Source: Paragordius varius (lineage: Eukaryota; Animalia; Nematomorpha). Taken from it: a stretch of 64,000 bases of DNA. Of the stretch, positions 19,392 through 63,309 are shown piece after piece; within the stretch, counting starts at the first letter, position 1; each line of letters starts with the position of its first letter. A program made the translations under genes and the position numbers. Below the pieces are notes generated by a model. It was not told where the DNA came from. It saw only the letters and a list, made by a program, of their open reading frames with translations, and ran no database searches. The stretch spans positions 3,658,001 to 3,722,000 of the forward strand of contig OZ176054.1 of NCBI GenBank assembly GCA_964247055.1. Reading direction: 5' to 3'.

Positions 19392-19930
19392 TTAAGTCCA
19401 AGTTGTTTTAGGCCTCCCTTTACGGTTGGGGGCAGGAATCTGTAAATCAAGAATTTCCTTTGCAGGTGAGTCTATACTGGATCTGTCTATGTGTCCAAAA
19501 TACCGAAGTCTATTTGTTCTGATAAAAGCTGTTATTGGTTCTAGTTCAATGGTAGGATTTATCATCATATATTTTAGCATTTTATCTTCTGTTCTTTTTA
19601 ATCTCGATTCTAATGTTTTTGTGATTGCCCAGGTTTCGCTGGCGTAGGTAAGGGTAGGGCGGACACCCACTTTATACATTTTGATTTTATTTTTTACGGT
19701 TATGTCTTTATGTGTCAAAACATATCTGAGTTGGTTAAATTTTGCCCAACCGAGTTTGATTCTATGTGATATGGTTGTTTGAGGGTCTCCATTATATTAC
19801 TGATATTACCTAAATAGGTAAAATCGTTGACGATTTCGAACCTACAGTCTTCGATACTAAACTCCCTTGACCGTCTTAATTCAATTTTATACAAATTATA
19901 ACTCAAAACATTTAGGCAAAATCTCATTCG
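19392..19930 (-). mobile_element. 3' fragment of a non-LTR retrotransposon (RTE-like clade), frameshifted
   Basis: FEIVNDFTYLG, then KIKMYKVGVRPTLTYASETW and RLRYFGHI..R...GRPKTTW, the typical C-terminal signature of RTE-type ORF2. Confidence 0.85.
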
Positions 19931-41867: not shown

Positions 41868-44209
41868 CTAATAAATGTAAGGAATCAGTCTGTAAGGGAC
41901 TTTGCGACAATAATCTTCCCAATACTTCCCATACTTTTGACTGCATCTTTCCTCATCTCGATACACACGATTTATCAGGAGCGTAAGCATAAATGCTATG
42001 TAAAAATATGGATATAGCGCTTGAGTTATTGGGCCACATGCTAAACACATACAGGAAGCTAAAATAATATCCCCAGTGTAATTAAAATGTCGAGCTACAC
42101 CCCAAAACCCTGATGTAAGCAAAGCGCTATGGTGAATAGCACCGTCAGATGTGGAATATTTGGTTGGGACATAAGTTGCTGGTTTTGAACTACCTCCTAT
42201 CAAACCCCCAAGGTAACGAATGTAATACGGTTTACCTGGAAAGATTACATATACATAATTATATAAAGACAAGTTATGAATATGTATAAAATTGAAATCC
42301 TTTGAGCTATGTCGCAAGAGGTGTTTTAGACCGTTATCCATTTAGACCAGGAGTTAGCACGCCGTCTTCCGAGACTTTACGTGCGGCCCCTGAAAAATTT
42401 GTAAATTAAAAATTTACAAAATTTTAATTGAATTAATATTAACAATTTTTTTTAATTAATCTATCTAATTGGCAGGAATCAAATAATATGGAGTTGCCAT
42501 TTTAGAGTTTTATATTTAAAATTTAATAAATTATTAAATAGCCATATATATATTTGGATCTATTTTTTAAGTCAAAATGCGGCCGGCGAAGCCATTTGTG
42601 TTGGACACCACTGATTTAGACAGAGGTTTTTATTTCTTCGTTTAAATAAAATACTTGAATTAATCCATTCTATTATTATAACGTTTTTGGTAAAAAAACG
42701 AAAATACCACCAAGATTTCAAAAATGAAAGGTGTAAAAATAGTAATTGATCAAAATTTATAAAACTTTATTAATAATTTATTTTAACGGTATTTTACAAA
42801 AAAATAAGACATGTTTTGCATGCTAGCTAAATTTTACACGAACTTAAATTCATACAAAACATCTATGATAAAGTTTTTAAAAACATCATTTAATTTTTGG
42901 CCTTTGGCGCCCTCTTTCAAATTAAAATTATACTGTTATCTTTTGTGTGTAAGTATATTTTACACATGATGAAACTTATAAATTTTGGTAACGAACATGG
43001 TTCAAGGCCAACGTACTAAAATACTATGCATGAAAAAAACAATACAGCTGGATAAAAACTGCAACATCTTGAAATGCTATCAAATTTAAATTTAAGAATA
43101 TATTGTGAGAAAAATAAAAATACATGTATAAATAGTGTTATTTAAGTATGAAAAATGTTTTAGCCACCACCTGCCGTAAAAGCCAATCTAAATTGATCTT
43201 TTTGGTTATTTGTGAGTCGAAAAATGGTGTAACCCAAAAGTCCAAGGGCTAAGAGTATGTAAAATTTATACGGTCCAAGCACCACTAAGTTACGTGATAA
43301 GTATTGAGCTTGTAGGGTATACATGAATGGGAGCCAAACCAAATCCCCCCATGCCAAATAAAAGCCAAAATGATCATGGGCAATGTCAATCGTTCTCAGG
43401 TACCAATCCTCATTCACGAATAAATCAAGGGCATAAATACCTTGGAGAATATTGACTAAAATCATTGAATCAGACACGGTCCCAAATTTACGGAATTGAT
43501 AGGCGGCGAATGAAGCATTAATAAGGGTCCATGCTATGATCCCAGGACGTCCATTGTGAAACAATTTGAAATCAAACGCCTCAGTTATCCGGGGGTTAAA
43601 CTCGATACCCATGTAAAAATCGTAGAGGGAAGAATCGCTAAATTTTCTATCTTCCGGGTGATTGGGCCACACATATGCTTTGATATAAACAAAAAGGGAT
43701 AATGCATAAGCTAAAATGTTTGACGCTATGAGTAACCCTCCCCAATTATCAGCGATATAAAAGAGGGGATTAAATATATTCGGATAAAAAATGGAGAATA
43801 CGATAAATAGGATATGTGATATGATCCAGGCAAAAAGTCCATTGACTTTATATATTGGCAAATTTCCAGCTGGTGTTATTTGACCCTTTGTTATTTTACC
43901 TGGTAAACTTACATATAAAATTATTTGGAATATATACCATGACAACAAAGCATACATAGCTGATAATTCAAATTTGGGGCCATAATGTTTTAAAAAATAT
44001 TTTATACCTTTGAAATATATAAGGGATATTGGCTTGATAATATTGCAACCGAAATAGGTCAATGAAGACCAATAATACACAACTAAAAAGGGACAACATG
44101 TTAAAATCAAGAAAGTTGTTATAAATGAAATATATTTATCTAGCGCTGACTTAGAATGTGAATAACGTCCCCATGAATTGTTGGCTGATATTTTGGAATC
44201 TGAGACCAT
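41868..44209 (-). CDS. DHCR7: 7-dehydrocholesterol reductase (sterol delta-7 reductase, ERG4/ERG24 family), ~468 aa
   Basis: complement(join(41868..42235,43171..44209)); the donor could alternatively be 3 nt further on. Motifs GIEFNPR, FDFKLFHNGRPGIIAWTLIN, WYLRTIDIAHDHFGFYLAWGD, SGFWGVARHFNYTGD and RDEERCSQKYGKYWEDYCRKVPYRLIP. Confidence 0.92.
42348..42614. mobile_element. hAT MITE in the DHCR7 intron
   Basis: Perfect 8-bp TSD ATTTAGAC on both sides; ends cag... and ...gttggacaccactg; gcggccc motifs. Confidence 0.8.
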
Positions 44210-46627
44210 GCTATTTAAATTTTAAAATAATTAACAACAAAATGTGAAAGGATGATTGTATTGCGCTTGATTTTTTCTAGGCATAAAAAGAGTAATTTTG
44301 GTAAATTCATGCATTTATCTTTTTAATCCATTAATATAATTTTGGTAAGTGATTTATACTTGAATATTCTAAAAAAATTTCCAAAAAATATTCTAATTTT
44401 AAAAATTGATGTTTGCAATTGCATCCCAAAACTATTAATTTTAATAATAATTTTATTACCAAATAATTGATTGAAAATTAATTTGTTTTAAAAGTCCCCA
44501 TTTTTAAAATATCTCCCTATAAGCCAGTATTATAACCATTTAACCAAAACTCTAAAATTGACGGCTAAAACCTTGAAATGAAATTTTTTACAAATTTAGC
44601 TTATGAAAAGAACATTACTTTATATATTAAAATCGATATCCTACTTAAGATATCACGCTCTGAAGTTTTGAATTTTTGAAAAGGTTTAAGTTAAATTATT
44701 TAAAATATATTAATGGTTGGCCGAAAGTGACAATTACGTAGTTATTTAGACAAATGCATTCTCTTCAAGGTGGAAATTATTTTTTTTAGAAATTCATGAG
44801 GGTTAATCTAAATAAATTAAATTTATGACCTTTTACGCCCATCTTTTAAATTTTTTTAATTTGTTTAAAAAATTTCAAACGTTTGGCCAACAAATATTTT
44901 TAGTTAAATATCCATTATTAAATTTGAAACAATTTGGATACAAGAATACACTAGATGTTTTTAACTAAGCTCTAAATCTCAAAAGGGGAATCACAAAAGT
45001 TCAAAAGGCCCTTTATACTCAGCAATTGATGATTTATCTAGTGATTCTATGATGAAACTATAATATTCCATTACCGTTTGGGGTAATTTTATTTCACAGC
45101 GCAATTTATTTGAATATTTATAAGTGTTTAAGCTAATAAGCCTAATTCGAAAATATGCTTTTTTAGTCCTTTAGACGTAACTATAAATTATTTTTAAATC
45201 GTAAAATTGTAAAAAAAACCTCATCTCAAACTTTTTTATCGCCATTTATTAGATTTTTTCAAATCTCTAATGCAGACAAATAAATGTATATTATGGTTAG
45301 AAAACAAATAATTAACAATAGAAAGCTTTCAGGCTCTATTTCACCAGTAAAATTAGATATATTTTCATCTTTATATCAGCTGTTTCCAATCTTGTTTTGG
45401 ATGTCGCAATTTTAGACTGTAAAAGTCACACAACTGTCAAAAATTTAAGCTTTTTTTGTAATTACATGTGAACAATGATAAATAATTAAATTTTAACTAA
45501 TATAACGTTCAAAACTAGAGTGTTTTTACAAAAATGAGCTATGAGATTGTAAACAAAAGGTAAACTAGGACAAAAAAGTAAGGTAGTGGTAATACATATC
45601 ATTTAGGTTGGTATCGATTCAATTATTAAGTACCTCTTCACAAGAAAACAATTTTATTAAATTAAAAATATGTTCAGAGAAGAAAGCTTATGCACACGGT
45701 TTTACGGCTTTACGGCTTTAAACTTCCCTAAATATATCGATTGGCACCTTATAGTTGGGAATTAAGTCTAGTTATATTATTGATGGCTCTGTCTTCCAGA
45801 AACGATAGGCATTCAGACGTTTCAATGTGTCCTTTTCTTACATATAACACAGTCTCTAAAATAAAATAACCGTAATGAAGCATATATATTTTGATAAAAA
45901 AATGTAATAGGACTATCAAAGTGCTTTTTTGACGAATAAGAGTCTAAGAAATTTACTTATACTTTTGTGAAAGTGCTCCATAGAAGAAAATGGCAAACTT
46001 TCCGCACATTATTTGAAATAAAATTTCTGTAATGAAAGGTATATGTTTCATTGCAAAAATCTCACAAAGGAAAAGCCACACAATATTTTTGTAAAATTTT
46101 AATTTTTAGATGTAGAATTCGAAAGTCCCAAATTGTTTCCTTTTAAAAGAGGCTAGTTTTTATAAAAAAACGCAATCATGAAAATGTCTTTTTGATATCA
46201 ACTAAAATTATTATTTAAAATAATGCATAGTTCTTCAAAAGTTATTTGTTTTTAATATGGAGTTTCTAATATTTTTTAAACTGAAGCGTTTTTTTTCACA
46301 AATAAAATAATTTAAAAAAATGTGCCATTTTTTGATCCTTACATAAAAGTTTAAAAAACTTTCTTAAATAATTCGTAAGGGTCACAACCAAGAGCACCAT
46401 GACAATCCTGATACATTTCCTATCAGAATCTATATACATCAGGATGTTTTTTATCCCCGCTTTTTTATACTGTGTATATAGGTGTTAAAATTATTTTGCT
46501 TTATTGAATTTACATTTTTAAAAATTTAATCGAATACCCGCATAAATTTACAAGAAATCTATCGTAAAGAAGCACACACTTGTTATTTATCAGCTGATTT
46601 AAGATCAATATTTTTTTGGACTGCGTC

Positions 46628-49600
46628 ATGGCACTAAACACCTCTGATAAAAACGGTGGTCTTTTGATATATAATGGTGAAAGGTATTAATATATTTTTA
46701 TTAAGAATATTTTTATTTGTCAAAAAAATGGAGTTTGTCCTGATAGATGACCATAAGAAAGAGATGAAAGGCGATGGCCAATTGTTTTTAACATCACATC
46801 GAGTATACCTATATGTATATACAATTATTTTATTAGATTGTTTTTTTGAACCTAAACAAAAAAGACCAGTTTAGATCGTTTAGTATTCCATTTTCTTGTA
46901 TGGATAAAGTTGAATTAAAACAACCAGTTTTGGGAGCTAATTACATAGAAGGACATGTAATGGCTCAACCTAACGGCAATTGGAATGGTACAGGCAAGTT
47001 TAAGTTAACTTTCACCACGGGAGGCGCGACAGATTTTGGCAGAGCGCTTTTAAATGCAGCACAGAGAAGTATTATAAAAAATATTAAAATAGTTGCATTA
47101 AAGATACGCTATTTTATTTAACACTTCATTCATAGATTGAGAAAATGTATTTATTTAAATATTAAACGGTACATTGTGCCCTAAAATGGGCATAAATATT
47201 TCAAAATTTTTATTAATTTTATAAATTCAACAAGGGGTTTAAACCATTATTCCCATATTAGATGAAAAATTAAATTTGAGTTAATATATAATTTCTAAAA
47301 TAATATTAATGCAACCATATCAAATCAATTTTTATTCGTATGTTTTAAGGTGTTATTAATGGCTTGCATTATAAAAAGATTTTTCTAAGGCATTATCCAT
47401 GATAAAGAATTGTTTTATTTCGTTTACGGCAGTGGTTTCCAACCTTTTTTATGCCTCAAAATATTCTTTCGTTATTTAAAAAAACAAACATGAAAATGCA
47501 AAATTTAATTGTATTATGAAACTCATTATCAATAAAATCCTTGTATCTCCAATTTTTGAAATATTTTTCCCATATCGGTAATCATATTAACCTTCAAATT
47601 AATTTTATTTTTTAATTGAATTGTCCAAATTTTTTGCGTCTCCCCCTACATTTTCGACGCCCTATTAAGAACGAAACCTTATCTTTACGGTTATTAAACA
47701 GGGTTCAGGAAATTTTTATTTTAAAATATTTTTAACGGTAATAAACTTTTTAATTAAAGTTCCAATCAATTTTTTTAAACCGATATCCTGGATATTGAAA
47801 TTAAGATTTAGCAATATAATTTATTTCCTTGTTAGACACAAATTTTCGTAATTTTTTTATAAGATGAATTACTACTTAAAAAGAAAAAATGTTTTTTTGG
47901 GACAGATTTGGAAAAAATTTTACTGTTTTAAAAACTTTTTTAAAAAGAATATCCATTTTTGTAAAACCATTAAAAACGAAGGCTGAATAATATTTTTATT
48001 TGTCAACATGTTTTTTTAATCAAAACATACTTATATATTTAGTGCACTAATAAATGTTAGCATTCTAAGTCAGGGATGTCCAGCACGCTTTTTTTCGGAT
48101 ATTCTAAAAAATATTAAAAAAATAAAAAATTAGATTTCAATTAAAAATTTACGATTAAAGATACATCATTCAAAATTGTAATCAAATAAAATAAATGAAT
48201 AAAGACCAAAAATTATCAAAGCAGCCGCGAAGATATTTGTTTAGGACATACATACATTATTGTAAATCAGGTGTATTACTAAATCAAATCAATGGAATCG
48301 GTTCAAGGATTACCAATATAATTTTTTTTTCATTAAATTATCAACATCTTATTACTTTAATATTTCTCAAACCATCATGACATTATTTAATTTATGATTA
48401 TAATTTGACAGTGTTGAACAGGGGCGGACCTCCACCCTATGAACCGCCCCCGCCTCCGTTTAATCCGGCGGCCCCAGGAATGTATGTTGCACCCCCTGAT
48501 GCTAATGTCGGCTTTCCAATGCCCACAAACATGTTTCCCCCAAGTCAAATAAGTAGGAGATTTAATTTTATGATTATATTTTTAGATAAATATAATTGCA
48601 TGTTTTTACGTTTTAATGATATAAATTAATGAATATTGAATATTTTATTTATATTTATTTAAAGTGTGCTTAATTGTTATACTGATCTTTCATGCAGATA
48701 TTTTTGTGTGTTTATAACTAAATTTATGGAAACAAATTAATTAGTTAGGGTTTGCTATTTTGTTTAAATCGTATTATATAATAAGTAAAATGAGCATTAT
48801 CTAAATTTCTTTTAATTTTATTCAGTAATCTCGATTATAAATTTGATTTTTTTCGTCTGTTTGACAGATGAGCCAATATTAGTTTCAAACGCTCCCCCGC
48901 CTTACCCTGGAATATATCCGCCATTACCTGACGCACCACCTTATTCAGGAGCAGGTCTGTAATTTTGCTATTGATTACGCTACGAAATATATTTAAAATT
49001 ATTTTTTTCAAATATATATATATATATCACTATAAATAATTATTAAAAATTGCCGAAACTAATAAATCTACACATCATATTCACCCATAAACACTTATAA
49101 TTCACCTTTGATTTTAAATTTACAATTTGAACATTTATAATTCACCTTTGATTTTAAATTTTATCCTGAAAAATTTTTTTATGTTGGGCTTAATTAAACT
49201 CATAATTGACAAATTATTATTTTTTGGCATAATTCATCGATTTTCATGTTTTATATACGCTATTTGGCCAGACACTGAATTATATATACTAATTGTAATC
49301 ATTTGTTATCTAGAAGAGATCAAAGATCCTAAAATATGATTGTCTAAAATATTAGGCCTTTTTACGTTTTCTCTTTATAATTCAAATTTTGCATAGTATC
49401 CAGTTTAAATTCTGTTTTTTATATTTTTTATTTCATATAGTTGGAGGAGGACCAACAGTTGCACCAGCATATTATGATCCACAAAATCCACAGAATATGT
49501 ATGTTCCGGTAAGTAAATTATTCTAAATCTTTTATATAAACGCTAGGCTATCATCATTTTAAAATGACTAAAGTGGATTGTTTTAATCTAATAAATTACA

Positions 49601-51165
49601 CATATTATTATTTGCAAGAAATAGTTTTACTTATTTTTGTTAAGTGTAAAAATCTTCTAGAAACTGATTGAACATCTGGCTTTATTTATGGTTTTTTGCC
49701 ATAATTAATGCATCACGTAAATAATCCATTTATTTTATAAAATAATTTATATAGGTTTAACTTCACAATACTTTTATTAAATGTTACAGAAAAACTTGCA
49801 ACTCACTATTAAATTTTTTTAAATGTTTAAATTTTGTAACTGTTTGGTATGAAAAATATAAATATTTTTAAAACACATTAAATTTTCTGCATTAAATTAA
49901 TATATGGTCTTTACTAATTTGATCTCTTTTAACCTAAAATCTATGTCTTTAATAATAAAGCACCCTTTGTTTTTGTAGCAATCTTATTTGAGAAACGATG
50001 ACATATTTAAAATATTTTTATTCTTCATAAATGCACCGATCATAGTCGATTGCCCCATCCTCTAAAAACAGGGGTTTTAAAAAAACAAGCATCTAAAAAC
50101 CGTGTATTTGAATCATTAATTATAAAATATGACACCAATTATTGGGTGTTTATTTACTATTAATGAATGCGCCGATCATAGGCCACTTTTTTGATTTACT
50201 ATTGGTTTTAGCCTCCTTGTAAAATTAGGGTTTTTAAAATACGATTCCCCAAAAATCAATTTTCCCGAGAAAACATTTGCAATCATTCGGATTCAATTAT
50301 GGATTTTTATATATTTATAAATGCGCTGATCGTGATCGAACTAGTTTTTTAATTAACCCCTATGTATAACTCCATCTTCTTTAAAATTAACAATACGTTT
50401 TAAAAATATTTATTAAACAATATTTAACGGAAAATGTAAGACAATATAAATTGATGGTCAAGGTATCCCACAAATGATTTTGTTATAGTGTCTTAACTAG
50501 CTTAGGTAGAGTCCTATTTTACATATCTTCGCTTAATTGTCATAACTTTAAAGCGATTTTTGGGAAAACGTATACCTTCATTAAAAGTCGATTACGGTTT
50601 AAAAATTTTTCCATTAGGTATGCCTCAATAATAAGTCTACTATTTTGAAAATCTTGATTTATAAATCATCGTCTTTAATGAGTCACTAGATATATGATCG
50701 TACACTCCAGTTATTTTATTATAATCTATACATATCTTATGATTAAGTAGGTTAAAAAATTAAAAATTTCCATGAATACTTAGTATAAAAAGAATATAAG
50801 AGCATTTGGTTTCATTTATAAAATACAATATTCCTGTAAAAATGTTATAAAGTATTTACTAGATCAATATGAAGTTTGACTTATTTTTTATCTAATTAAT
50901 ATCCATAAGTATCGCAGTTTCTTACCTATCAAGTAAAATTTTACATAGATATTGGTCGCATTGTAAGGGTTTTTTTCATTAAATATTTATAAATATATAT
51001 TTTAACATTAAAAGCCTGAGCTGTAAATAATTTTAAAATATATTATCCTATTTTTATCAATATATTAATTTATAGCCACATGCAGCGGGTGTGGGACCAT
51101 CAAGCCCTAAGGAAAAGCCTGCAAGACCTCCTCCACCATACGAAGAAGAAAAGAAAAACCTTTAA
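46628..51165 (+). CDS. WBP2: WW domain-binding protein 2 (GRAM domain plus PPxY motifs), 256 aa
   Basis: join(46628..46683,46706..46802,46837..47068,48412..48552,48868..48954,49441..49508,51076..51165) = 771 nt. MALN..., LFLTSHR|IVF, FSIPF..M..VELKQPVLGANYIEG, FKLTFTTGGATDFG, PPPYEPP, APPPYPG, AYYDPQNP and PPPYEEEKK. Introns 1 and 2 are 22 and 34 nt. Confidence 0.93.
50020..50345. repeat. Three ~140-bp degenerate tandem repeats in the last WBP2 intron
   Basis: Core aaatgc(a/g)c(c/t)gatc at ~50029, ~50165 and ~50319; resembles the reverse complement of the tatggtggcgcattt core at 23097-23750. Confidence 0.5.
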
Positions 51166-51349
51166 ATTTTTTAAAACAATGACTAATTTTAAATTCTCAT
51201 TACCGCTTATTTTAAACAACTAATTAAAAAATATTTATTTATCACTCATGTGTCAATATTATGCAAAATTTTTCATGTTAGAAAATTTAGTTGTTTTATT
51301 AAACTAATTATTTAATAAATTATATGTTTCATTGTTATTATGACTGAAA

Positions 51350-52693
51350 TCAATCTTTGGCGTCGGCTACTCCTCCAACAGTGATTGCGAAAGTTGCTTC
51401 ACTTTCTGGCATACATGGACTATAATAAAATATAAAATCATAAATTTTGTCCTAAAATATTGGGTCAATAATTTTAAGCAATAATTATTAAAAATAAAAT
51501 ATATGCTACCTGTCATAAATTTTTGCAATACGGTTGTCACCACGACCTTTTCTCAAACTTATTCGAGTGGTGGATGCATGTGCCAAAATATTTCCTCCTA
51601 TCGGCTTTTTTGGATCAACTTGAAATCTAATTTTATTGTAAATCTTTTACGAAAGAGTAGCTCCTGGATCAGCTGTCATTTGGTTCGTTATAAAAACGGC
51701 GACATTGTACTCCTCAGATATTTTTTGAAGTCGCGATAGCATTAAAGCTAATTTTTGTTGTCTTTCAGATAACTCACCCCGGCCACTGAAATCAACCCTA
51801 AAAAGGGCCATAACCGAGTCAATTATCTATATATTTTATAGCAACAATCTTACCAATAACTTATAAACTCCCAATTCCTCGTGAAATTTGGCTGCCACAT
51901 TATCTAAAATTTCATACTGTTGTTCACCTTAAATTAAAATATTTTTTACTCGTAAACGGTCTAATATAGATAATATTTTTTAGCATGGCCTCTTCATCCA
52001 TATTGAATCTATCAGCAATTTGTTTCAAACGATCTGGGCGACTAGATTGGTTAAATTAAATTTTACAAAGTATTTTCAGTGTCTATAAAACAAACTTTGC
52101 CCCCACTATAATTATTTGATCCTGGCAGTTGAGCGGTAACTATATTTTTAAATTTTGATTAAACCACAAAGTGTATGGGATAATTGAGTTTTACCGGTCC
52201 TAAATTCTCCAAAAACTTCAGTAATTGCCATACTTTCTATCCCCCCTCCAAGCAGCTTATCTAATTCTGCGCTACCAGTTGATATTTTAAATACATGTTG
52301 TCTTTTTTCTGATACTTCTAATGCTGTTAAAAAATTTGAGGACTTAAATATTTAAATTTACTTACGCTCATCTTTGTAATACACTCCCTAATTTTTTCAA
52401 CTTTGGCCTCGGATAAACCTTTAATGGCACAAAGTCGTTTTCGAGTCATCATTTGCACACCCTTTTTTCTTTAAATAATAGTTAACTTTGATTGTACATA
52501 TTCCAACAGTTTTTAATTTTTTTAGGTCAGCAGAATTCTATATAAATATATTATAATATACGATTCCGAAATTTGTCAATATATCAATGTCTTGAATATC
52601 ATCATCCTATATTGTTAAAAGTTATATATTTACTCCAAAATCTTCTCCAAGTTTGGATGTAATGTCGGATGGTAAACTAAGTTCTTCAATCAT
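51350..52693 (-). CDS. DMC1: Meiotic recombinase DMC1, 343 aa, 11 exons
   Basis: complement(join(51350..51419,51510..51626,51651..51826,51854..51927,51950..52041,52067..52139,52165..52342,52366..52461,52487..52537,52562..52606,52634..52693)) = 1032 nt. Walker [12 protein letters not shown]1-type segments [56 protein letters not shown] and [14 protein letters not shown]. Introns 5' to 3': 27, 24, 25, 23, 25, 25, 22, 27, 24 and 90 nt. Confidence 0.97.
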
Positions 52694-53046
52694 AATTTTT
52701 TGTGTTTGTTTTGGAAGTTTATAACAATCGTTTGCTTTTGAAACTGAAAAACAATAATAATCGTCTGATATTTTAAACGGTAAGATTTTGGCTCTCATAA
52801 GTATGTAATAGATATTTTTGGAGTTCATAAATTTGGCGACCCTTATAATATTATTAAGCCAAAATAATTGTATTAAAGCATTTTTAAATTTTCCAAAAGA
52901 AACACACTCCAATTATTTCGCATAAATTGTTGCATCACTCTTCATTTGGCTAAATTCTTTATAGGTGATTTTTGTATAAAATGTTTGGCAGATCGCCATA
53001 AATTTTGCTATATCATCGCCGATTAACCAATACTCGATTCATAAAT

Positions 53047-55062
53047 ATGAATTACAAAACGTTTTCCTTAACTTTATATTTTTCACAGCTCTTGTTTTAT
53101 GTTACATTAGTTCGCGGTTCTAGTCTTTCAAATACCTGTGGGATCTCATCAAAAGTTTTTAACAAATGCAACGTTTTGCAAAACATATACGGGGGAGTAA
53201 ACGCATTACCCTCGACTTGGCCTTGGATAGTAAAAATCGATTTACATTATTTAAAATAGGCAAGTATTCAACGAATGAAATCCGGCAAGTTCAATGTACT
53301 TTGCGCTGGCACTATTATAACTGATAGACATATTATAACAGCGGCACATTGCTTCGAATTCTGGTAATTTGTTTTCTTTTTTTTTCATTTAACCCCAAAA
53401 TTTAATTATACCATTTTTTTATTAATAGATCATCATAATTTTTTTGACATAGTGAGAACTTAATTTTTGTGCTTGTTAGTTATTCTATATATTTTTATAG
53501 GACTGATCTTGACATCTATCGATTAGTTATTGGCACAACTAATTTGGATGATTATGGCCCAGATAACGTATATAAAATAACTCGCGTAACATTGAGCCCA
53601 AACTATAGATCCTTGACTTCGGACAGTGATATAGCAATTTTAGAATTCTCTCCACCTCTCAAGAACATTACTCAAAGGACGTTGTGCTTACCATCTACTC
53701 CAGTCGATGGTGTTAATGCTAGTTGCTACGCTGCAGGCTGGGGTTCCACTGAAAGTAATATCCAATTTAGGCCCTCATTAACATTTAAGCATTTGATTTT
53801 TTTTTCCTAGTGCCAAAAATGTATTAATATTATTTTGACTCTATATTGATTTAAGTTAATTTAAACTTGATCTGATTCATTTGTAATTTAAATTTAACCA
53901 TGATTTATGCAAATGATGAGATAAATACAACTATTTCGTACAGATATAAAACCGTTTTATACTTGGTTAATCTTAGCCAAGCTGATGGACATAAATAATT
54001 TATATAAAGATATAATTGGTAAAAGAGGTAAATAAAGTTTTTCGCAAGTTTTATCCTTACCATAAAAAACCACTCGGTATGTAAACCCTTCTGGCACTTG
54101 AAAGCCCAAGGCTGTTGTTTAGTTAAATCCTAAAAATGTTTTGAATGACCTATAATTTAAAAAGAAAGTCTTTACTGTTTCGACGGAACCAGGTTGAATA
54201 AACTCGCTGCATATGACTACACAATGATTAGTGTTTGCGTATTGAAGAAAATATTTTATTTAATTGTCTTTCTTAGCACATATTGATATGATTACTAATA
54301 TATTTATCAATCATGTTAACGTTGAAAAATATTTTTGGACCGAAACGTTTTTTTGTATTCTGGCAATTGGCGCATTAACTTTTGTAATTCAATTATAAGG
54401 ACACAGTGATTGAAGTCAGGTTCCATCAAAAAATTATAAAATTAATTTATCTGCTGATACGGAACCGTATTTATTAATTCTAAAATTTAGCACAAAGATC
54501 TTCCAGGCTTCTCAAAGAGGTCTGCTTGCCAATGGTGCCGCTTGATGAATGTAAAAGAATTTATGGGCGCGAATTAACCTCAAATATGATTTGTTCGGGG
54601 GATGTTAGCCGTGGTGGGATTGATACTTGCGATGTATGGATCTTATTCATTTATCGAACAAAATATTTGTTAAATTTAAAATTTTCATTTTTGAGGGATG
54701 TTTTTTAATTGGTTGCTAAAATTTATATCAAACTTTTAAGTGATTTCTGTTTATCTAAATATCTTTTTTCAGAAAACCATGGGGTCTGTTAGTGGGTCTG
54801 CTAAATTATGATAATTGAAGGCCAGTAATTTTAATAAAGATGTTGGGTAATGGAGTAATGTTAGAATTTTTTTAAGTCATATATCTCTGGTAAAATAGGG
54901 GCCCCACAGAGAAGAGTTGCGGTTTTTTCATCGTTGTTTGAATTTTGAAGGCGCATCATATTATTTTGAGGGCATTTTTTCTACAATTGAAATCGGATCC
55001 TGTTTGTTCACGCAATCTTAAAAAAATTATTCAAATGTTTAGTATGTGTAAAATAATGCAAT

Positions 55063-55099
<37 letters not shown>

Positions 55100-56116
55100 T
55101 TACGAAGGAAGTTTAGCTATTATGTACTTTTTTGAGTGTGATATTTTGTAAAAATTTTTTTTAACCTTGATTCAATAAGGAAAAAAATGTTGATTGGACA
55201 CCAGAATAAAAATAAAATTATAGGTCCATCTTGCAATGGCATAGAGGGAATATTAATTGTTACAACAATATAATAAGTTAATTTACAGAAAAGGTTTTAT
55301 GCAGGCAGAATCTCGACCAATACGTACTCCAACAAATGGCATAAATTAAATTTACGTTTAAAATACTTTTAATCGGTTTTTAATTTAATTTATGATATAT
55401 ATTTATAAACAGTCAATATTGGATAAATCGTATTTTTTTTACGTGGTTTGTCGTCTTAATAAATTTAAGTTAATTTTTTAAAAATTGCATCATCTAAAGT
55501 AAATAAAACGTCGATTATCAAAAGTAGCGGATAACAATACAACCTTGATAATTTTGATATCTTATTTATTTAAGTAGTTTTGCATGTATAAGTTAATTAC
55601 AGTTATATTACATTTTTTAATTCAATTTGCATATTTTAAAAAGCATGTGACGTCTACCTCTAGCACACGTGCCTGGTTAACTTGAGCAAAATTAAATATC
55701 AAAATAATTTACAGTGTTAACTTAAATAAAAGTATTATAAATTATCATTATAAAAAATATCGCCGGTAAGTCTTATTTGTTACCATATATTCCTAACATT
55801 TATATAAAAGTTTATAAAAAGTACACTATTCGTCGTCCTTTTTTATTCAAAAATGTTGTTTGTTTTTTAAAGCCAAAATCAAAATTGTATATATTTTGGT
55901 ATGAATATTAATTAAAATATTTCATGATTTGATGGATTTGTGCAATGTTTTAAGGGTGATTCTGGGGGACCCGTTATGTGTTACTCAGAACCAAAAAAAA
56001 GATGGGAATTACATGGGATAGTTAGTTGGGGATATGGATGTGCTCGTCCAAACAGGCCTGGCATCTCTACTTACGTTTATCGTTTTGTGGATTGGATTGA
56101 ACAAAATATTAAATAA
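53047..56116 (+). CDS. Secreted trypsin-like serine protease (family S1A), 281 aa
   Basis: join(53047..53229,53260..53363,53501..53754,54491..54633,55955..56116) = 846 nt. Signal peptide, IYGG mature N-terminus, WPW, TAAHC, DIAIL, AAGWG, DTCD|[15 protein letters not shown] and RPG. Intact catalytic triad and S1 Asp. Intron 1 is 30 nt. Confidence 0.93.
55067..55095. repeat. (TA)n microsatellite
   Basis: TA dinucleotide run inside the last protease intron. Confidence 0.85.
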
Positions 56117-56838: not shown

Positions 56839-59800
56839 TTATTCATATTCCTTAAGAATCTTTTCCATTATACTGATAAGATTGTCTAAGCCATATAAAT
56901 AACCCCGATCTGGACCAGGCCCATCTACTTTACCCATAGCGATATTTTGTTGCAGTTTTTCTTTACTAATTACGCAATCAACAAAGTTCTCCGTTTCGTC
57001 AGAGTTATCGTGGCAAGATGAAGGAAATACAATGTTAGATGATGAGTGAGCAAAATCAACCATATTAATTTGTGCTGGCCAACCAGGTTCAAGATTGTGT
57101 TCAAATACATTTTGATTCTGATTGAGTGCGTCGGAATCAGTGTGTTTATTGAGTTGAACAATATAATCTTTGTATCGATTTGTGTCATAGGCTGGATTCC
57201 CTTCATACAAAACTAAAAGAGAGCTTGAATAAAACCGGTACGTAGGTAGCTGAGCTAATATGCTCCTGAGATCTTTGAGTTGATTTATAATCATAGCCAT
57301 CATATCTATGACACCATCTAAGCGGCTATGTTTACAATCCACCACATCATACTCTTCAAAGGGAGGTGTAGTTGGTGCAATGCCCGACAATGATTGATGG
57401 TTGGTACCAGAATCCAGGGCGCGAAACTCTTGATTTCGAAAACTGTCCGCTTGCTTTTGCCGTTTATTTTGGGTTAAGTCTTGTTCTGAAGGACATAATT
57501 TGTAGAAGGTGCATCTTTCATTTTCGGCATTAATATCCCTAATAAAGTTTTGATTGCTGTCTGTTGGTATTATCCCACATGCCTTAGACGCCTTTGAATT
57601 ATTGCAAAACGACAGGGCAGTTTGAAAAAATAGGCGTAAACTTTCTTCAAACCCTTGGATGGTTAGTTTACGGCCAATATATTTGTCGTAACACAGAAAA
57701 GCTCCCTTTTCAGGTTGATAAACCTAGATATTTTGTAAAAAAAAGATTGACCAGAGGTATAAAATTATCAATTTATTACTTATTTATATTAGGTCAAACA
57801 TATTTTTTTAAAAATAACAGTTATGAATTTAGTAAAATTAGATAGAGTAAAATACTATACTTTGCAGTTTAAAACAATGAATTATATTTAAAAAATCCAA
57901 AAAATATTTGCCTTTATATTTATGTTTTGACCGTGAATCTATTTTTAATGTGATTTAGTCCAGTCATAAAAATTAAATAAAAAACTCCCCTACTCCATCA
58001 AAAAAAATCCAAATCGTTTTTAATAATATTTTATATGGACACAAAAATCTTTTCTTTATCGAACCTGCTATACCAATAAAAATAAAAATTAACAACTTTA
58101 TTACACAACACCTCACAAGTTTTCGTTCTATAAATATATAAACGCGTACTTGCATTCCACATATTCTAACTCCGAGGGATCCTGAGGTACTAGCTTCGCA
58201 TTTCGCTATTTGACTTATTCGTTTTTGTTCGCTCGCATCGTCTCCGTACTGACGGATTCCCATTTTCAGGTCAAGGACGCAAGGAAAGTTATAGGCCGAC
58301 GTTAAATCTTGTAATCTGATAAATTCTAAAAAATAAAGTAAAAATCAAATCATATTGTTGATAATTGTTGATAATAACACATTTATTTGACAAAACGGTT
58401 TTTAGTTTAGAGTGTCAGTTGTTGGATTATGAACACGCACTTACCATTTATATACTATTTACCGTTAAATTTCACCCTCGAACAATAATTCAAATTCACC
58501 CTCAAACTATATTCACCCTAAAATAAATTAAGTTTTTTTAAAATAAAAATTACTTATATTTTTTTTATATTTTAAAAAAATAAAATTTGGTTAAAATTAA
58601 AATAATAAATAAATGATAAACTATGCCATTAGGATATATTTCATATAATAATGAGTTATATTAGCCCGAAAACACATAATTTATTTTTAGGGTGAATTTG
58701 AATTTTCAAGGGTGAATTTGAATTGATCGAGGGTAAATTTGAATTGTAAAGGGTATATTTATTTTAGCCTGATTTTAATCATTCATTTTTGACAATAAAA
58801 TTATTTTCAATTAAGGTTTAAATTAATTACCAAAAATTTTCCAATAAAAGTCACATTCATATAAAAGCGAGCTATCTATTTCCTATATTGAAATTAAAGA
58901 TAAATGTAAGGTGTTTACGGGCCAAAAATAATAACAGGTCTGATTGTTCATAAATGCACTGCTGATTCTCGGTGATAAACACTAAATTAGAGCCACACGA
59001 AATTAAAAACTATGAATCAATTGTTTTTGTCAGTGTTAATAACCTTAATCTCTAATTAAAAACAATTGAAAAAAATACCAAAGTTTAACATTCTTTAATA
59101 TTTAATCACAATTTTTCATGACAAAATATAAATAAATGTATTTTATACCACGACCGTGATTTAATTATTTTTTAAAAGGGTCACGTCACAGTCAAGGTCA
59201 TGAAAAAGCATTTATAACCAGTCAAGCTAACCCAATTAAAGGGGACACCTATAAGTTGATGTTATAGGAAGAAATTTTAACACTAAAAATAATTAATCTT
59301 GGTTAATGGAGCTTAGTTACGCACATTGCGAGTTAAGTGCCAATAATGTAAACTAATGGATTAAGTAATTGAATAGATAAGTGCCAAACAAATAATTTGC
59401 TTTTAATACTTTGGATAATACTTATTTAAAACAATGAAATACAGCTTAATATATAACTTTAAAAATACTTATACCACAAAAATATATTATAAATATTTAA
59501 TTTTTCCATTTGCTAATTCATATTTGGTAAAAGTAAAATTTTAGATGCTGCAATCTTATGTTCAAATATCATTTAATTTAAAACATATAGAGATGAGGGA
59601 TATGATAGAGCTTAAATTTAAAAATACTTAATTAATATTCAGATTAGGTCAGTTAAAAGCTACATTATATTTGTCAATGGCCCTTTATAACAAAGTTTTA
59701 GGTTTTTTCTAAAAGTCACGTTCTCCCTTTTGTGCAATATGTATCTCACATATGCATAAAAATTGATGAATTAATTTGTTGAAAAGTCATACTTTGTCTT

Positions 59801-62499
59801 TTTTTTATTTTACTTGAAATTTATCGTCAAGGAAGTTAAAAATATCTAATTCTTGGTCAATACTATTAGAAATTATTAAAACTTTAATATTTACAAATTT
59901 AATCAGTACCGGCCTTTAAATCGATTAATGTTAGTATAAAAAACAAACTTACGACGTTGAACCAACTTAAAATAAAAACTTAAGAATATTTATATATATA
60001 AAAAATCTCAATTATAAAAATATTAACAATCCCCCCATATATAATTATTAATTACTGTATTTTATGTGATTATCACGTTGCATAGCTAGTATTTGTTCTC
60101 GATGTCGTTTTAGGCTCCATGGGTTAAATGAATAAGATTTTCGCTTATTTTGTTGGGGTGTGTTTGTCGAGACCGTAGTAGAAGCAATAACATTGTTTAA
60201 CGAAGTATTTGAAAGTTGGTTACTATTAGAAATTTTAATACTATTCATATTAGTATTAAAATTAGGGTTATTGGAGATATTTGTATTGCTGCAAGGTGGA
60301 AGGAGAATAGAGGTGTCAGCTTTCTCAAATAAATTTAAATTAAGCGGATCCAATACCTCAAGGCTTCCTGTGCACTTCATACGAACTTTTATTGTGGAAT
60401 ATCTAGACAAAAACAAAATTAATATGTTTTAATGATATATAAGGTAAGAAATAAAGATTTCATTAAAATGTTTTAAACGCTATATGGTAGTAATTTCTAA
60501 TAAGAATAATAATTTACAAAATTAAAAAAATTCGCATTAAACTACTATAATAACTATGACAGTTTATCACATCGATATTGTTATCGATTTTGTTTTGTAA
60601 AGTAAAACCTAAAATCGCTAAGAGTGATAATCCAAATCGCTCCTAAATTCTTGCTTGCGTTTAACAAAATATATAGCTAAAAATTCATGATATTGCATCT
60701 AGGGTTGAGCTGATTAAGTCATGACCCGGTCAGTGACTATTTTTTGACCATGGTCATTTCAGCTGTTTTTTGAAAAATTACTGGTAATCTTTTTTGGAAG
60801 AAAAATAGTAAGTTATTTTTAAATATATTAAAAAATATATAAATATTTAAATTGCCTATTTAAAAATTTAAACTGTTAAACTTGCATCCTTAAAACATTA
60901 GCATTTAAGCATATCCAGTTATTTCGAAAAAGAAAACAATCCAACTTTTTATAAAATATTCAATTATTCCATGTATGTGAATTAATAAAATGAAAAAACA
61001 TTTTATAATTGGATATTTCAATGATCGAAAGTGTAAAAAAAAACAGGAAAAATTTTATTAATATCCAGTATTAAAAGCGAGGTATTTGAAAATTCAGAAG
61101 TAATTTCACAATATAATATCGCATGGTATTTACGTAGGTAAAGTGGTCATGACACCGGACTTTTTCGAAAAAGCAGTCAAATCCACAACCCTAATTGCAT
61201 CCAAAGATATTATAGGTTATAATGACTCATAAATTACAATTTGTAAATGATTGCAACAATATTTTATAATCGATTATTATTGAACCAAACCAAACCGAAC
61301 CAAATGGTAAAAATTCGAAAACTAAATCATTTACTATATATACTATTTATTTCAAACAATAAAATATATCAAATCTATAATAATATTAAAATTAGGTAAT
61401 TAACTTAACTAAACTATCGGTTATTAATATTATTGTAATAAATAAAAAGTTACGCAAAGTTTTTTTGTTCAAAACAAAGGTTAAGGTTATAATATGCATA
61501 AAATGCGACAAAAAAATGAGATACAAAACGAAAAAGTAAGCAAGCCTATGCAAAAAATTACCAATACATAATACCTAAAAGAAAGGGCTTTATACATAAA
61601 GTTAAATTGTAGCCGTAATTATCAAAATTAATTTATAGAAAATACCAAAATAAAGGTTAAAAAAAGTGTCAAAAATTTAATAAATATTACATTCATCATG
61701 CGGAATGTCAAAATGCCATTTTTTAAAAATTATAAACTGATTAAGTTTTTAACCAGGGCCCTATTAATAAAGATTATTTTTATATCAAAATAATTAATGA
61801 CAACATATAAAAATACCGATTAAAAATGCAATTCATCGAGAAATATACACATATAAAAAAATTTAAAAAGAAAAATTACTTATCGTTAAAACTAGTGGTG
61901 GTGTTACGATATTTTTGTTGGTGAGAATTTAATGGTAAATCAAGGATTTTATCCGGTAAACCATTAAATGATTTAGATTTATTAAGGGATAAAATTGGAG
62001 ATACTAAATTAAAATATCCCTTTTTATCTTTTTCCAACAAAACCTCAACGGTACCTAAAAATTACAGCAATTATTTACCATAATAAGCTGCAATATATGG
62101 CTTTAATCTAGATGGTATATCATATTTGTAAAATTCTTTTTCTTTGTTCTGCAACGGTTTGCATATGGTATGTTTATCAAATTTGAGCATGCATAAGTGA
62201 CCACCAACTTGGTGTAAAAATGGTTGCAGGTTCACAGTTAATTTATTATTATTAAGTTTTGTGTCCACATTACTTAATACATTATTATTAGGTTTAAATT
62301 TAATAGAATCACAATAATGAGATTCCGATAAATCACTTTGGTGAGCTGGAAAAAATTTTGGTAATGTTCGGTCCTTTGATATCAATAATGCTTCCTGGGA
62401 TGATTCATCCGTAGTTTCATCAATAGAATATGTAGGAGTATCAATATAATCAGCGTTCTTATTTAAGTCATTTTGATTTACGTTAAGGTCCCATTCCAT
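56839..62499 (-). CDS. IP6K: Inositol hexakisphosphate kinase, ~667 aa
   Basis: complement(join(56839..57723,58150..58325,60056..60402,61880..62054,62079..62499)) = 2004 nt. [50 protein letters not shown] (PxxxDxKxG), [10 protein letters not shown]|[22 protein letters not shown] and [13 protein letters not shown]. Intron 1 is 24 nt. Confidence 0.93.
58442..58755. mobile_element. TA-flanked AATTCACCC-repeat MITE, second copy, in an IP6K intron
   Basis: Shares aatgagttatattagcccga.aacacataatttatttttagggtgaatttgaat with 38386-38621; multiple ttcaccc / gggtgaa subterminal repeats. Confidence 0.7.
60700..61193. mobile_element. hAT MITE with TAGGGTTG termini in an IP6K intron
   Basis: TIR tagggttg / caacccta; perfect 8-bp TSD ATTGCATC (60692-60699, 61194-61201). 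Confidence 0.85.
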
Positions 62500-63309
62500 A
62501 AATAAGGGTTTATTCAAGCCAATAATTTAATAACCACTAGGATTGATTATAACAGACCATCAAAAATAAATTTTATAATTTTTTATTTAATTAATAAATT
62601 ATAAAAATATTATAGATGCTTATGATAAAGTTTCTAATTAAAATTAGTTTTATCAGAGTTTTTTTAGGGATTCTTTATAACTACAGCATACAATTCTAAC
62701 AATTAGTTTAAACTTAAGCAAAAGTTATAGATAAGCAGGATATTAAATAATAATACAGGTAAAATATCATATTTATAATTTATCGCTAATGCATATTTAA
62801 TAATTTGCACCTATTAAGTTTTTTGTTTGGGGCTAAATCTTTTAGACTAACTTATTTATTATCAGTACATTAATTTTTAAAACATTATATATTGCTTATA
62901 TGGGCAAAATAAAAAATACGCATTTTTTTGCGCATATTTTAAGAAACTCCTTAATTGTAAAAAATCATCTCGATCTTAAAACTTATTTGCATATTATTTG
63001 ATTCGAAAATATAGAAGGCAAATATTTAAAATATACAAACAAATTAATTTTAGAAATAGAGCATTTTAGCAACAAATTTTGAAATTCATGAATAATGGCC
63101 TGTTTAAAATCGCGTTTTAGGTTTCAATTTCGAATCTAATAGTTGGAAAACTGCAAATATATATTTTTATTTAATGATTTGATTTGAACCAAAACAACTT
63201 TTAAAATAGTAGTTTTAAATAGAGCACGGATTCAAAATATAATTGTTTTGCATGAAATATCTTATTTTTCATTGCAAAACAAAACATTATAAATCAGATG
63301 TATCGCAAG

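What the first reader, a model, noticed from the sequence alone, without database searches (positions are those of the whole stretch)
51350..52693. DMC1 is split by nine 22-27-nt spliceosomal micro-introns
A complete 343-aa DMC1 appears only after removing nine GT-AG segments of 27, 24, 25, 23, 25, 25, 22, 27 and 24 nt plus one of 90 nt. The short ones are nearly all A/T, lack a recognisable branch-point consensus or long pyrimidine tract, and use donors as weak as GTTAAC and GTTTAA. This is far below the minimum intron size of typical animals; such sizes are known from a few reduced lineages such as Paramecium and dicyemids. It implies a spliceosome adapted to ultra-short substrates. The gene is absent from the ORF track and would be missed or miscalled as a pseudogene by standard gene finders.
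Basis: partly seen in the sequence, partly recalled or inferred. Interest (0 to 1): 0.9.

Follow-up and report, generated by a model that had tools for sequence, protein, structure and literature searches.

The report
DMC1 gene with nine tiny introns
An intact meiosis gene (DMC1) of an AT-rich animal genome, most likely a horsehair worm's, is split by nine introns of only 22-27 bases that sit exactly where other animals have ordinary introns; such tiny introns are published for only two other animal groups, and I could not obtain RNA to show them being cut out.

Summary
On the minus strand (52693-51350), removing ten GT-AG segments of 27, 24, 25, 23, 25, 25, 22, 27, 24 and 90 nt gives a 343-aa ORF.

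- **Identity:** it is DMC1, not RAD51. Exon 9 scores E 1e-30 against human DMC1 and 1e-12 to 1e-14 against RAD51. It is 80% identical, without gaps, over 256 aa to a mammalian DMC1.
- **Decisive evidence:** all ten segments lie at the same alignment column and codon phase as introns of nemertean DMC1 (69-457 nt). Eight also match priapulid introns exactly. Exon lengths are identical base for base. These are ancestral introns shrunk in place.
- **Retention:** keeping any one of them gives a stop within 63 nt.
- **DNA check:** a DNA run reproduces the segments. Its two located differences are a 1-nt indel inside intron 3 and a synonymous change.
- **Gap:** no RNA evidence. The RNA-labelled runs held nothing of this locus.
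- **Taxon:** the neighbouring DHCR7 is closest to Gordionus, so the genome is a hairworm relative.
- **Literature:** the papers I could search report introns under 30 nt only in dicyemids and myxobolid myxozoans.

The scan had already noted this intron class elsewhere in this genome. DMC1 is an especially clean case.

The parts
52634..52693 (-). DMC1 exon 1 (60 nt, ATG at 52693)
   Evidence: Tubulanus exon 1 is 57 nt.
52607..52633 (-). intron 1, 27 nt, phase 0, GTAAAT...ATAG
   Evidence: Same column and phase as the Tubulanus 189-nt intron. In-frame TAA 9 nt in.
52562..52606 (-). exon 2 (45 nt)
   Evidence: Tubulanus exon 2 is also 45 nt.
52538..52561 (-). intron 2, 24 nt, phase 0, GTATAT...ATAG
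   Evidence: Tubulanus has 86 nt and Priapulus 322 nt at the same site.
52487..52537 (-). exon 3 (51 nt)
   Evidence: Tubulanus exon 3 is also 51 nt.
52462..52486 (-). intron 3, 25 nt, phase 0, GTTAAC...AAAG
   Evidence: Tubulanus 179 nt; absent in Priapulus. DNA run X1 carries a 1-nt insertion here at 52462.
52366..52461 (-). exon 4 (96 nt), helix-hairpin-helix part
   Evidence: Weak Pfam HHH_5 match, profile 31-54.
52343..52365 (-). intron 4, 23 nt, phase 0, GTAAGT...TAAG
   Evidence: Tubulanus 69 nt, Priapulus 168 nt.
52165..52342 (-). exon 5 (178 nt), Walker A GEFRTGKT. Equals two ancestral exons (83+95 nt) fused by intron loss.
52140..52164 (-). intron 5, 25 nt, phase 1, GTTTAA...ATAG
   Evidence: Tubulanus 79 nt, Priapulus 303 nt. 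Also the boundary of the segment missing from a vertebrate DMC1 isoform.
52067..52139 (-). exon 6 (73 nt)
   Evidence: Rad51 profile 49-71.
52042..52066 (-). intron 6, 25 nt, phase 2, GTAAAA...CTAG
   Evidence: Tubulanus 111 nt, Priapulus 142 nt.
51950..52041 (-). exon 7 (92 nt)
   Evidence: The X1 variant at 52005 is synonymous, TTC to TTT.
51928..51949 (-). intron 7, 22 nt, phase 1, GTAAAA...TAAG
   Evidence: Tubulanus 81 nt, Priapulus 239 nt.
51854..51927 (-). exon 8 (74 nt)
51827..51853 (-). intron 8, 27 nt, phase 0, GTAAGA...ATAG
   Evidence: Tubulanus 110 nt, Priapulus 591 nt.
51651..51826 (-). exon 9 (176 nt), Walker B LLIIDS. Equals two ancestral exons (115+61 nt) fused by intron loss.
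51627..51650 (-). intron 9, 24 nt, phase 2, GTAAAA...TTAG
   Evidence: Tubulanus 457 nt, Priapulus 252 nt. Spanned without any difference by an X1 DNA contig.
51510..51626 (-). exon 10 (117 nt)
   Evidence: Rad51 profile 186-223.
51420..51509 (-). intron 10, 90 nt, phase 2, GTAGCA...ATAG. The one ordinary-sized intron.
   Evidence: Tubulanus 188 nt, Priapulus 338 nt.
51350..51419 (-). exon 11 (70 nt, TGA at 51352-51350)
51295..51300 (-). AATAAA, candidate poly(A) signal about 50 nt after the stop (inferred)
   Evidence: Read from the sequence.

Best explanation
This is a functional DMC1 gene, the meiosis-specific RecA/RAD51-family strand-exchange protein, in a genome related to horsehair worms. 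Its ten introns are orthologous to the ancestral bilaterian DMC1 introns. Nine of them have been shortened in place to 22-27 nt, one remains 90 nt, and two further ancestral introns were lost. The short ones are most likely removed from the pre-mRNA by the ordinary U2-type GT-AG spliceosome. Recognition would rest on a reduced 5' signal (GTA in 7 of 9, GTT in 2), a terminal AG, and the sharp A+T contrast with the exons. A branch adenosine may lie in a TTTAA-like element about 9-10 nt before the 3' end. Shown here: the anatomy, the orthology, the conservation of intron positions, and the need to remove the segments to get an ORF. Inferred: removal at the RNA level, the signals used, and the lineage.
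For: The model gives a 343-aa ORF with Walker A and Walker B motifs. Exons 5 and 9 match human DMC1 at E 6e-25 and 7e-30, against RAD51 at about 1e-17 and 1e-12 to 1e-14. Identity to beaver DMC1 is 80% over 256 aa with no gaps across six junctions. Exon lengths equal those of Tubulanus and Priapulus DMC1 base for base: 45, 51, 96, 83+95, 73, 92, 74, 115+61, 117, 70. Ten of ten introns share alignment column and phase with Tubulanus, and eight do so exactly with Priapulus. The exon pieces tile the Pfam Rad51 profile consecutively. Retaining any one intron gives a premature stop within 3-63 nt. DNA contigs of run X1 are collinear through introns 2-9; the two located differences are a 1-nt insertion inside intron 3 and a synonymous exon change. 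Neighbouring genes show the same class: WBP2 has 22-nt and 34-nt candidates and the protease a 30-nt one. Introns of this size are documented as spliced in two other animal lineages (PMC13644364).
Against: There is no RNA evidence. The three RNA-labelled runs carrying the same species label held nothing of the 6-kb stretch at 90% likeness or better, not even the neighbouring WBP2 gene. No pyrimidine tract is present, and the branch-site motif is only weak and was chosen after looking. Two donors are GTT. The hairworm assignment rests on a single gene, DHCR7. A generic scan for short segments that join open reading frames did not separate real sequence from reversed sequence (18 against 14 hits), so the class cannot be demonstrated window-wide without homology.
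Confidence: 0.9

Rival explanations
1. The introns are real, but at this size they are spliced inefficiently or conditionally, as reported for the very short introns of microsporidia. Much of the transcript pool would then be retained-intron RNA destined for decay, and splicing could gate DMC1 production to meiosis.
For: Every intron, if retained, introduces a premature stop, which is what a surveillance-coupled system needs. The splice signals are minimal. PMC13644364 cites a median splicing efficiency of about 25% for microsporidian short introns.
Against: Nothing here measures efficiency. The same intron class appears in neighbouring genes that are not meiosis genes (WBP2 and the protease), so it is not specific to meiosis genes.
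Confidence: 0.1
2. DMC1 is a dead or dying gene. The short segments are not removed, and the apparent ORF is a remnant.
For: No RNA evidence. No uninterrupted ORF.
Against: All eleven exons are free of stops and frameshifts. The protein is 74-80% identical to DMC1 of distant animals, with catalytic motifs intact. All ten interruptions sit at ancestral intron sites with GT-AG ends. An unspliced gene would have had no selection to keep any of this.
Confidence: 0.03
3. The segments are removed by something other than the spliceosome, for example DNA-level excision as with ciliate internal eliminated sequences, or they are assembly artefacts.
For: Their size resembles the shortest ciliate eliminated sequences.
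Against: The boundaries are GT...AG, not TA...TA. The positions are those of spliceosomal introns in other animals. Contigs assembled separately from short reads of run X1 contain the segments unchanged, and depth is that of the rest of the locus. X1 may be the very sample from which the window was assembled.
Confidence: 0.02

Closest known systems
Ultra-short introns of dicyemids (Dicyema japonicum; Lu et al. 2019 and Zverkov et al. 2019, as cited in PMC13644364)
   Same: An animal, parasitic lineage with GT-AG introns under 30 nt. The 5' signal is reduced to about GTa and the 3' signal to AG, and there is no pyrimidine tract.
   Different: The dicyemid is described as having short introns across its gene set. 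Here a 90-nt intron sits in the same gene and introns of 0.5-1.3 kb sit in neighbouring genes. The lineage is ecdysozoan rather than dicyemid.
Ultra-short introns of myxobolid myxozoans (Henneguya, Thelohanellus, Myxobolus; median 22-27 bp; PMC13644364)
   Same: The same size range (22-27 nt) and the same argument from conserved intron positions between conserved exons. Weakly conserved A residues lie upstream of the AG, comparable to the TTTAA seen here.
   Different: [quoted passage not shown] This DMC1 is only moderately diverged (74% to nemertean and priapulid), and the window carries repeats and long introns. In myxobolids splicing was confirmed with long RNA reads; here it was not.
Ciliate short introns (various ciliate groups; Stentor 15-16 nt, per PMC13644364; Paramecium about 25 nt, from my own knowledge)
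   Same: AT-rich GT-AG introns with a tight length distribution near a physical minimum. Retention is detectable through premature stops.
   Different: They are protists, and their nuclear genetic codes commonly reassign stop codons (TAA/TAG in Paramecium; from my own knowledge). This gene has TGA as its stop, and all 13 Gln codons I counted by eye are CAA or CAG, with no in-frame TAA or TAG. That fits the standard code.
Canonical bilaterian DMC1 gene structure (Tubulanus polymorphus L006, 12 introns of 69-457 nt; Priapulus caudatus L004, 11 introns of 142-591 nt)
   Same: The same protein, with the same ten intron positions, phases and exon lengths.
   Different: Introns here are 3 to 20 times shorter, and two ancestral introns are missing (alignment columns 117 phase 2 and 267 phase 1).

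Membership tests
DMC1 (meiosis-specific RecA/RAD51-family recombinase) | RecA/Rad51 ATPase core with Walker A and Walker B motifs | tested here: met
   Pfam Rad51 (PF08423) profile tiled from 1 to 244 by exons 5-11. GEFRTGKT at residues 129-136 and LLIIDS at 222-227.
DMC1 (meiosis-specific RecA/RAD51-family recombinase) | Closer to DMC1 than to RAD51 orthologues | tested here: met
   Human DMC1 at E 6e-25 and 7e-30 against RAD51 at about 1e-17 and 1e-12 to 1e-14 for exons 5 and 9. 80% identity to beaver DMC1. 74% identity to Tubulanus and Priapulus DMC1.
DMC1 (meiosis-specific RecA/RAD51-family recombinase) | N-terminal helix-hairpin-helix DNA-binding domain | tested here: inconclusive
   Exon 4 alone gives only a weak HHH_5 match (E 0.008, below the Pfam cut-off). 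The region does align without gaps to the N-terminal domain of other DMC1 proteins.
DMC1 (meiosis-specific RecA/RAD51-family recombinase) | Expression and function in meiotic recombination | not testable with these tools
   No RNA of this locus was found.
U2-type GT-AG spliceosomal introns | GT at the 5' end and AG at the 3' end | tested here: met
   10 of 10.
U2-type GT-AG spliceosomal introns | Orthologous position and phase with introns of the same gene in other species | tested here: met
   10 of 10 with Tubulanus; 8 exact with Priapulus, plus one within one column.
U2-type GT-AG spliceosomal introns | Absent from mature mRNA | tested here: inconclusive
   Read laying on window:46600-52599 with three RNA-labelled runs laid nothing. 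The one run that holds the locus is DNA.
U2-type GT-AG spliceosomal introns | Branch site and polypyrimidine tract | tested here: inconclusive
   No pyrimidine tract. TTTAA occurs in 6 of 9, 11-14 nt from the 3' end (P about 0.015 against shuffles, motif chosen after looking).
Animal ultra-short (<30 nt) intron class (dicyemids, myxobolids) | Intron length under 30 nt as a recurrent class, not a single outlier | tested here: met
   Nine introns in one gene, mean 24.7 nt and SD 1.6. WBP2 has a further 22-nt candidate; the WBP2 34-nt and protease 30-nt candidates are similarly small but not under 30 nt.
Animal ultra-short (<30 nt) intron class (dicyemids, myxobolids) | Reduced splice-site motifs (5' GTa, 3' AG only) | tested here: met
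   Position 3 is A in 7 of 9 and T in 2 of 9. No consensus beyond that, and no conserved 3' motif except AG.
Animal ultra-short (<30 nt) intron class (dicyemids, myxobolids) | Short introns throughout a compact genome | tested here: not met
   A 90-nt intron lies in the same gene. Neighbouring genes have introns of about 0.9 kb (DHCR7), more than 1 kb (WBP2) and 0.1-1.3 kb (protease), and there is a high-copy repeat inside a WBP2 intron.
Ciliate-type internal eliminated sequences (DNA excision) | TA-bounded segments absent from somatic DNA | tested here: not met
   The boundaries are GT...AG, and the segments are present in the DNA contigs of run X1.

The most novel reading that the evidence does not exclude
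Horsehair worms, or one lineage of them, are a third, independent animal group with a discrete class of 22-27-nt spliceosomal introns. The class arose by in-place shrinkage of ancestral introns. Unlike dicyemids and myxobolids, this happened in a repeat-rich genome that still keeps kilobase introns, so intron miniaturisation is uncoupled from genome compaction. A corollary follows: some of the universal genes reported as missing from hairworm genomes (BUSCO completeness about 72% in Gordionus) could be genes that annotation pipelines broke on such introns.
Probability: 0.6. Interest if true: 0.8.

Novelty: new member of a known kind. Interest (0 to 1): 0.68.

Why it matters
Introns under 30 nt were long regarded as impossible in animals. 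A September 2026 survey of 51 animal genomes (PMC13644364) found them only in myxobolid myxozoans and one dicyemid, and predicted that more lineages would turn up.

This gene offers nine such introns in a row. Each can be matched one to one with an ordinary intron of other animals. The lineage is unrelated to the two known ones (an ecdysozoan), and its genome is not compact. That bears on two open questions. One is what sets the lower size limit of U2-type splicing, since several lineages converge on about 22-27 nt. The other is whether shrinkage is driven by genome streamlining, which seems not to be the case here.

There is also a practical consequence. Gene finders and completeness scores that disallow such introns will break or miss genes like this one. 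Claims of large-scale gene loss in hairworms should therefore be rechecked. DMC1 is absent from Caenorhabditis and Drosophila (established knowledge), so an intact copy here also says that the common ancestor of nematodes and hairworms still had it.

Tried and rejected
- **RNA evidence.** Run X1 proved to be DNA. The RNA-labelled runs X10-X12 held nothing of window:46600-52599.
- **Window-wide statistic.** A scan for 20-34-nt AT-rich GT-AG segments joining open frames gave 18 hits against 14 in reversed sequence. It is not discriminating and was dropped.
- **Close relatives.** A search with the exon-9 ORF found only fragments at 91% identity or less. The three contigs fetched (L001-L003) have introns of hundreds of bases and are not close relatives.
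- **Synteny with Gordionus.** The 22-kb locus around Gordionus DHCR7 (L007) shares only DHCR7 with the window and has no DMC1. I therefore could not compare the hairworm orthologue's introns.
- **Amphimedon DMC1.** The stored locus (L005) does not encode the stored protein exactly, so its introns could not be mapped.
- **Literature.** Cunha et al. 2023 (hairworm genomes, Current Biology) is not held, so I cannot exclude that it mentions intron sizes. Two held hairworm genome papers contain the word 'intron' zero times.
- **Rfam.** No match in the window.
- **First guess rejected.** I initially favoured a dicyemid genome. I dropped this after the DHCR7 result.
- **Paramecium-like origin rejected.** The protein is of the animal DMC1 type, and no in-frame TAA or TAG occurs among the Gln codons.
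- **Spliced protein not submitted.** It has no reference form, so I did not send it to the protein, structure or exact-match tools.

Full report
**The observation.** Reading the minus strand of 51200-52850 and rebuilding the model by script reproduces the finding exactly. There are eleven exons of 60, 45, 51, 96, 178, 73, 92, 74, 176, 117 and 70 nt. They are separated by GT-AG segments of 27, 24, 25, 23, 25, 25, 22, 27, 24 and 90 nt. The CDS is 1032 nt and encodes 343 aa, ending in TGA at 51352-51350. The short segments have 8-22% G+C against 37% for the exons. They are A-rich rather than T-rich (A106, T83, G24, C9) and have no pyrimidine tract. In the ORF lists the gene appears only as scraps of 58 aa or less, plus one ORF that reads into exon 1.

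**What the gene is.** Exon 5 (59 aa) and exon 9 (58 aa) match human DMC1 chains at E 6e-25 and 7e-30. RAD51 chains score about 1e-17 for exon 5 and 1e-12 to 1e-14 for exon 9. The spliced protein is 80% identical to a mammalian DMC1 over 256 aa with no gap. That alignment runs straight across six of the junctions. Taken one by one, the exon translations tile the Pfam Rad51 profile in order: 1-47, 49-71, 73-101, then exon 8, then 126-181, 186-223 and 225-244. Only the split codons are missing between pieces. Walker A (GEFRTGKT) and Walker B (LLIIDS) are intact.

**Are the segments introns?** This was the decisive test. I fetched the genomic DMC1 loci of a nemertean (Tubulanus polymorphus, L006) and a priapulid (Priapulus caudatus, L004). 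I then mapped their annotated proteins back onto the DNA with an exact splice mapper.
- Tubulanus exons are 57, 45, 51, 96, 83, 95, 73, 92, 74, 115, 61, 117 and 70 nt.
- Priapulus exons are 66, 48, 147, 83, 95, 73, 92, 74, 115, 61, 117 and 70 nt.
- The exons here are the same, base for base, except that 178 = 83+95 and 176 = 115+61.

In a three-way protein alignment all ten segments share alignment column and codon phase with a Tubulanus intron. Eight coincide exactly with a Priapulus intron. A vertebrate DMC1 isoform lacking 55 residues has its deletion bounded exactly by junctions 5 and 7. So the ten segments are the ancestral bilaterian DMC1 introns. Nine have shrunk from the 69-591 nt seen elsewhere to 22-27 nt, one is 90 nt, and two were lost. 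Chance coincidence of ten positions and phases is negligible.

**Must they be removed?** Yes. Retaining any single one gives a stop codon 3-63 nt further on. The five whose length is a multiple of three all carry an in-frame stop. An unspliced gene could not have kept eleven clean exons at 74-80% identity to distant animals.

**Is the DNA right?** Run X1 turned out to be DNA. Its short-read contigs are collinear with the window through introns 2-9. One contig covers 51470-51706 with no difference. Another covers 51842-52598 with two substitutions and one indel. The indel is a 1-nt insertion at 52462, inside intron 3. The one substitution that was listed, at 52005, changes TTC to TTT and is synonymous. 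This is the pattern expected of a gene under selection with free introns, though the numbers are tiny. X1 may also be the sample that the assembly came from.

**RNA.** This is the gap. The three RNA-labelled runs carrying the same species label held nothing of the 6,000-base stretch 46600-52599 at 90% likeness or better, including the neighbouring WBP2 gene.

**Whose genome.** The single-exon part of the neighbouring 7-dehydrocholesterol reductase gene (43163-44209, minus strand) has as its best hit a protein of Gordionus sp. m RMFG-2023, the Montseny horsehair worm. That hit has 63% identity and E 1e-141. All other named hits among the best 120 are from fungi or slime moulds, at 58% or below. 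The Gordionus locus has 25.7% G+C and its genome 26.9%, against 24-32% in 2-kb bins here. The window is therefore from a hairworm relative that is not Gordionus itself. Earlier notes of this scan had said so. That changed my first guess of a dicyemid, and one search is my own test of it. It rests on one gene.

**Context in the window.** The intron class is not confined to DMC1.
- WBP2 (plus strand, ATG at 46628) reads through only if a 22-nt segment (46684-46705) and a 34-nt segment (46803-46836) are removed. In the second case a 22-nt alternative keeps the frame. The gene then continues across introns of more than 1 kb.
- The trypsin-like protease next door (plus strand from 53005) needs a 30-nt GT-AG segment (53230-53259) removed. 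Its other introns run from about 0.1 to 1.3 kb.
- DHCR7 has one intron of about 0.9 kb, at the place where Gordionus has one of 528 nt.

Tiny and long introns therefore coexist, even within one gene.

**How it probably works.** Everything points to ordinary U2-type GT-AG splicing of minimal substrates: GT-AG ends, ancestral positions, and the documented precedent of such splicing in two animal lineages and in ciliates. The length distribution is tight, with mean 24.7 and SD 1.6. That suggests introns sitting at a physical lower limit. The only internal regularity I found is TTTAA in six of nine introns, starting 11-14 nt from the 3' end. Shuffled interiors reach six in 1.5% of trials, but I chose the motif after looking, so it is only a lead for the branch site. 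[quoted passage not shown]

**Comparison with what is known.** Hadjez et al. 2026 (PMC13644364) surveyed 51 animal genomes. They found introns under 30 bp only in Myxobolidae (median 22-27 bp) and Dicyema japonicum, with splice signals reduced to GTa and AG. They predicted further lineages. I could not see their species list, because no supplement is held. Two hairworm genome papers in the library never use the word 'intron'. A search for hairworm plus introns found nothing relevant. Cunha et al. 2023 is not held. As far as I could check, tiny introns in hairworms are unpublished. They differ from the two known cases in occurring beside long introns in a genome that is not compact. I file this as a new member of a known kind with that one distinctive trait.

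**Standing of this finding within the scan.** The same intron class has been noted repeatedly on other pieces of this genome, mostly without RNA support. One note claims RNA support at another locus, which I could not check. DMC1 adds the cleanest case so far: nine in one gene, every one anchored to an orthologous intron and to identical exon lengths in two other phyla.

Noticed in passing
window 41868-44209 (minus strand): The 7-dehydrocholesterol reductase gene has a Gordionus protein as best hit (63% identity). Every other named hit among the best 120 is from a fungus (mostly chytrids and zygomycete-type fungi, some ascomycetes and a basidiomycete) or a slime mould, with no other animal. 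This suggests either an old transfer into hairworms or an unusual retention. It has one intron of about 0.9 kb where Gordionus has 528 nt.
   Followed up: partly
window 46628-49520 (plus strand): A WBP2-like gene (GRAM domain, PPxY-rich tail) starts with two small candidate introns: 22 nt at 46684-46705 and 34 nt at 46803-46836, the latter with an in-frame 22-nt alternative at 46815-46836. It then has introns of more than 1 kb.
   Followed up: partly
window 47400-48400: Inside the first long WBP2 intron, the DNA run's word depth rises from about 400 to as much as 7,900, with many loose ends and joints. This is a high-copy repeat, probably a small transposable element.
   Followed up: no
window 53005-56116 (plus strand): A trypsin-like serine protease lies divergent from DMC1, with about 310 nt between the two start codons. 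It needs a 30-nt GT-AG segment (53230-53259) removed between 'WPWI' and the His-loop exon. Its other introns are about 0.1-1.3 kb.
   Followed up: partly
window 52462 and 52005: DNA run X1 differs from the window by a 1-nt insertion in the A-run of DMC1 intron 3, making it 26 nt, and by a synonymous TTC to TTT change in exon 7.
   Followed up: yes
window 51627-52633, the nine short introns: TTTAA occurs in 6 of 9 short introns, starting 11-14 nt from the 3' end. It is a possible branch-site remnant (shuffle P about 0.015, motif chosen after looking).
   Followed up: partly
window 13244-14961 (minus strand): A cold-shock domain piece (14740-14961) and a CCHC zinc-knuckle piece (13244-13654) lie on the same strand, as in a Lin28-type gene.
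   Followed up: no
window 56842-62517 (minus strand): An inositol polyphosphate kinase gene: the IPK domain is in the 183-aa ORF at 56842-57390, and likely upstream exons extend to about 62517 across long introns.
   Followed up: no
window 19392-19927 (minus strand): By eye, these ORF fragments look like the tail of a reverse transcriptase from a retroelement. I did not search them against any library.
   Followed up: no
runs X10-X12 against window 46600-52599: RNA-labelled runs filed under the same species label as the DNA holder contain nothing at 90% likeness or better to 6 kb that includes a gene I would expect to be broadly expressed (WBP2). The label may cover more than one species, or the transcriptomes are very shallow.
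   Followed up: no
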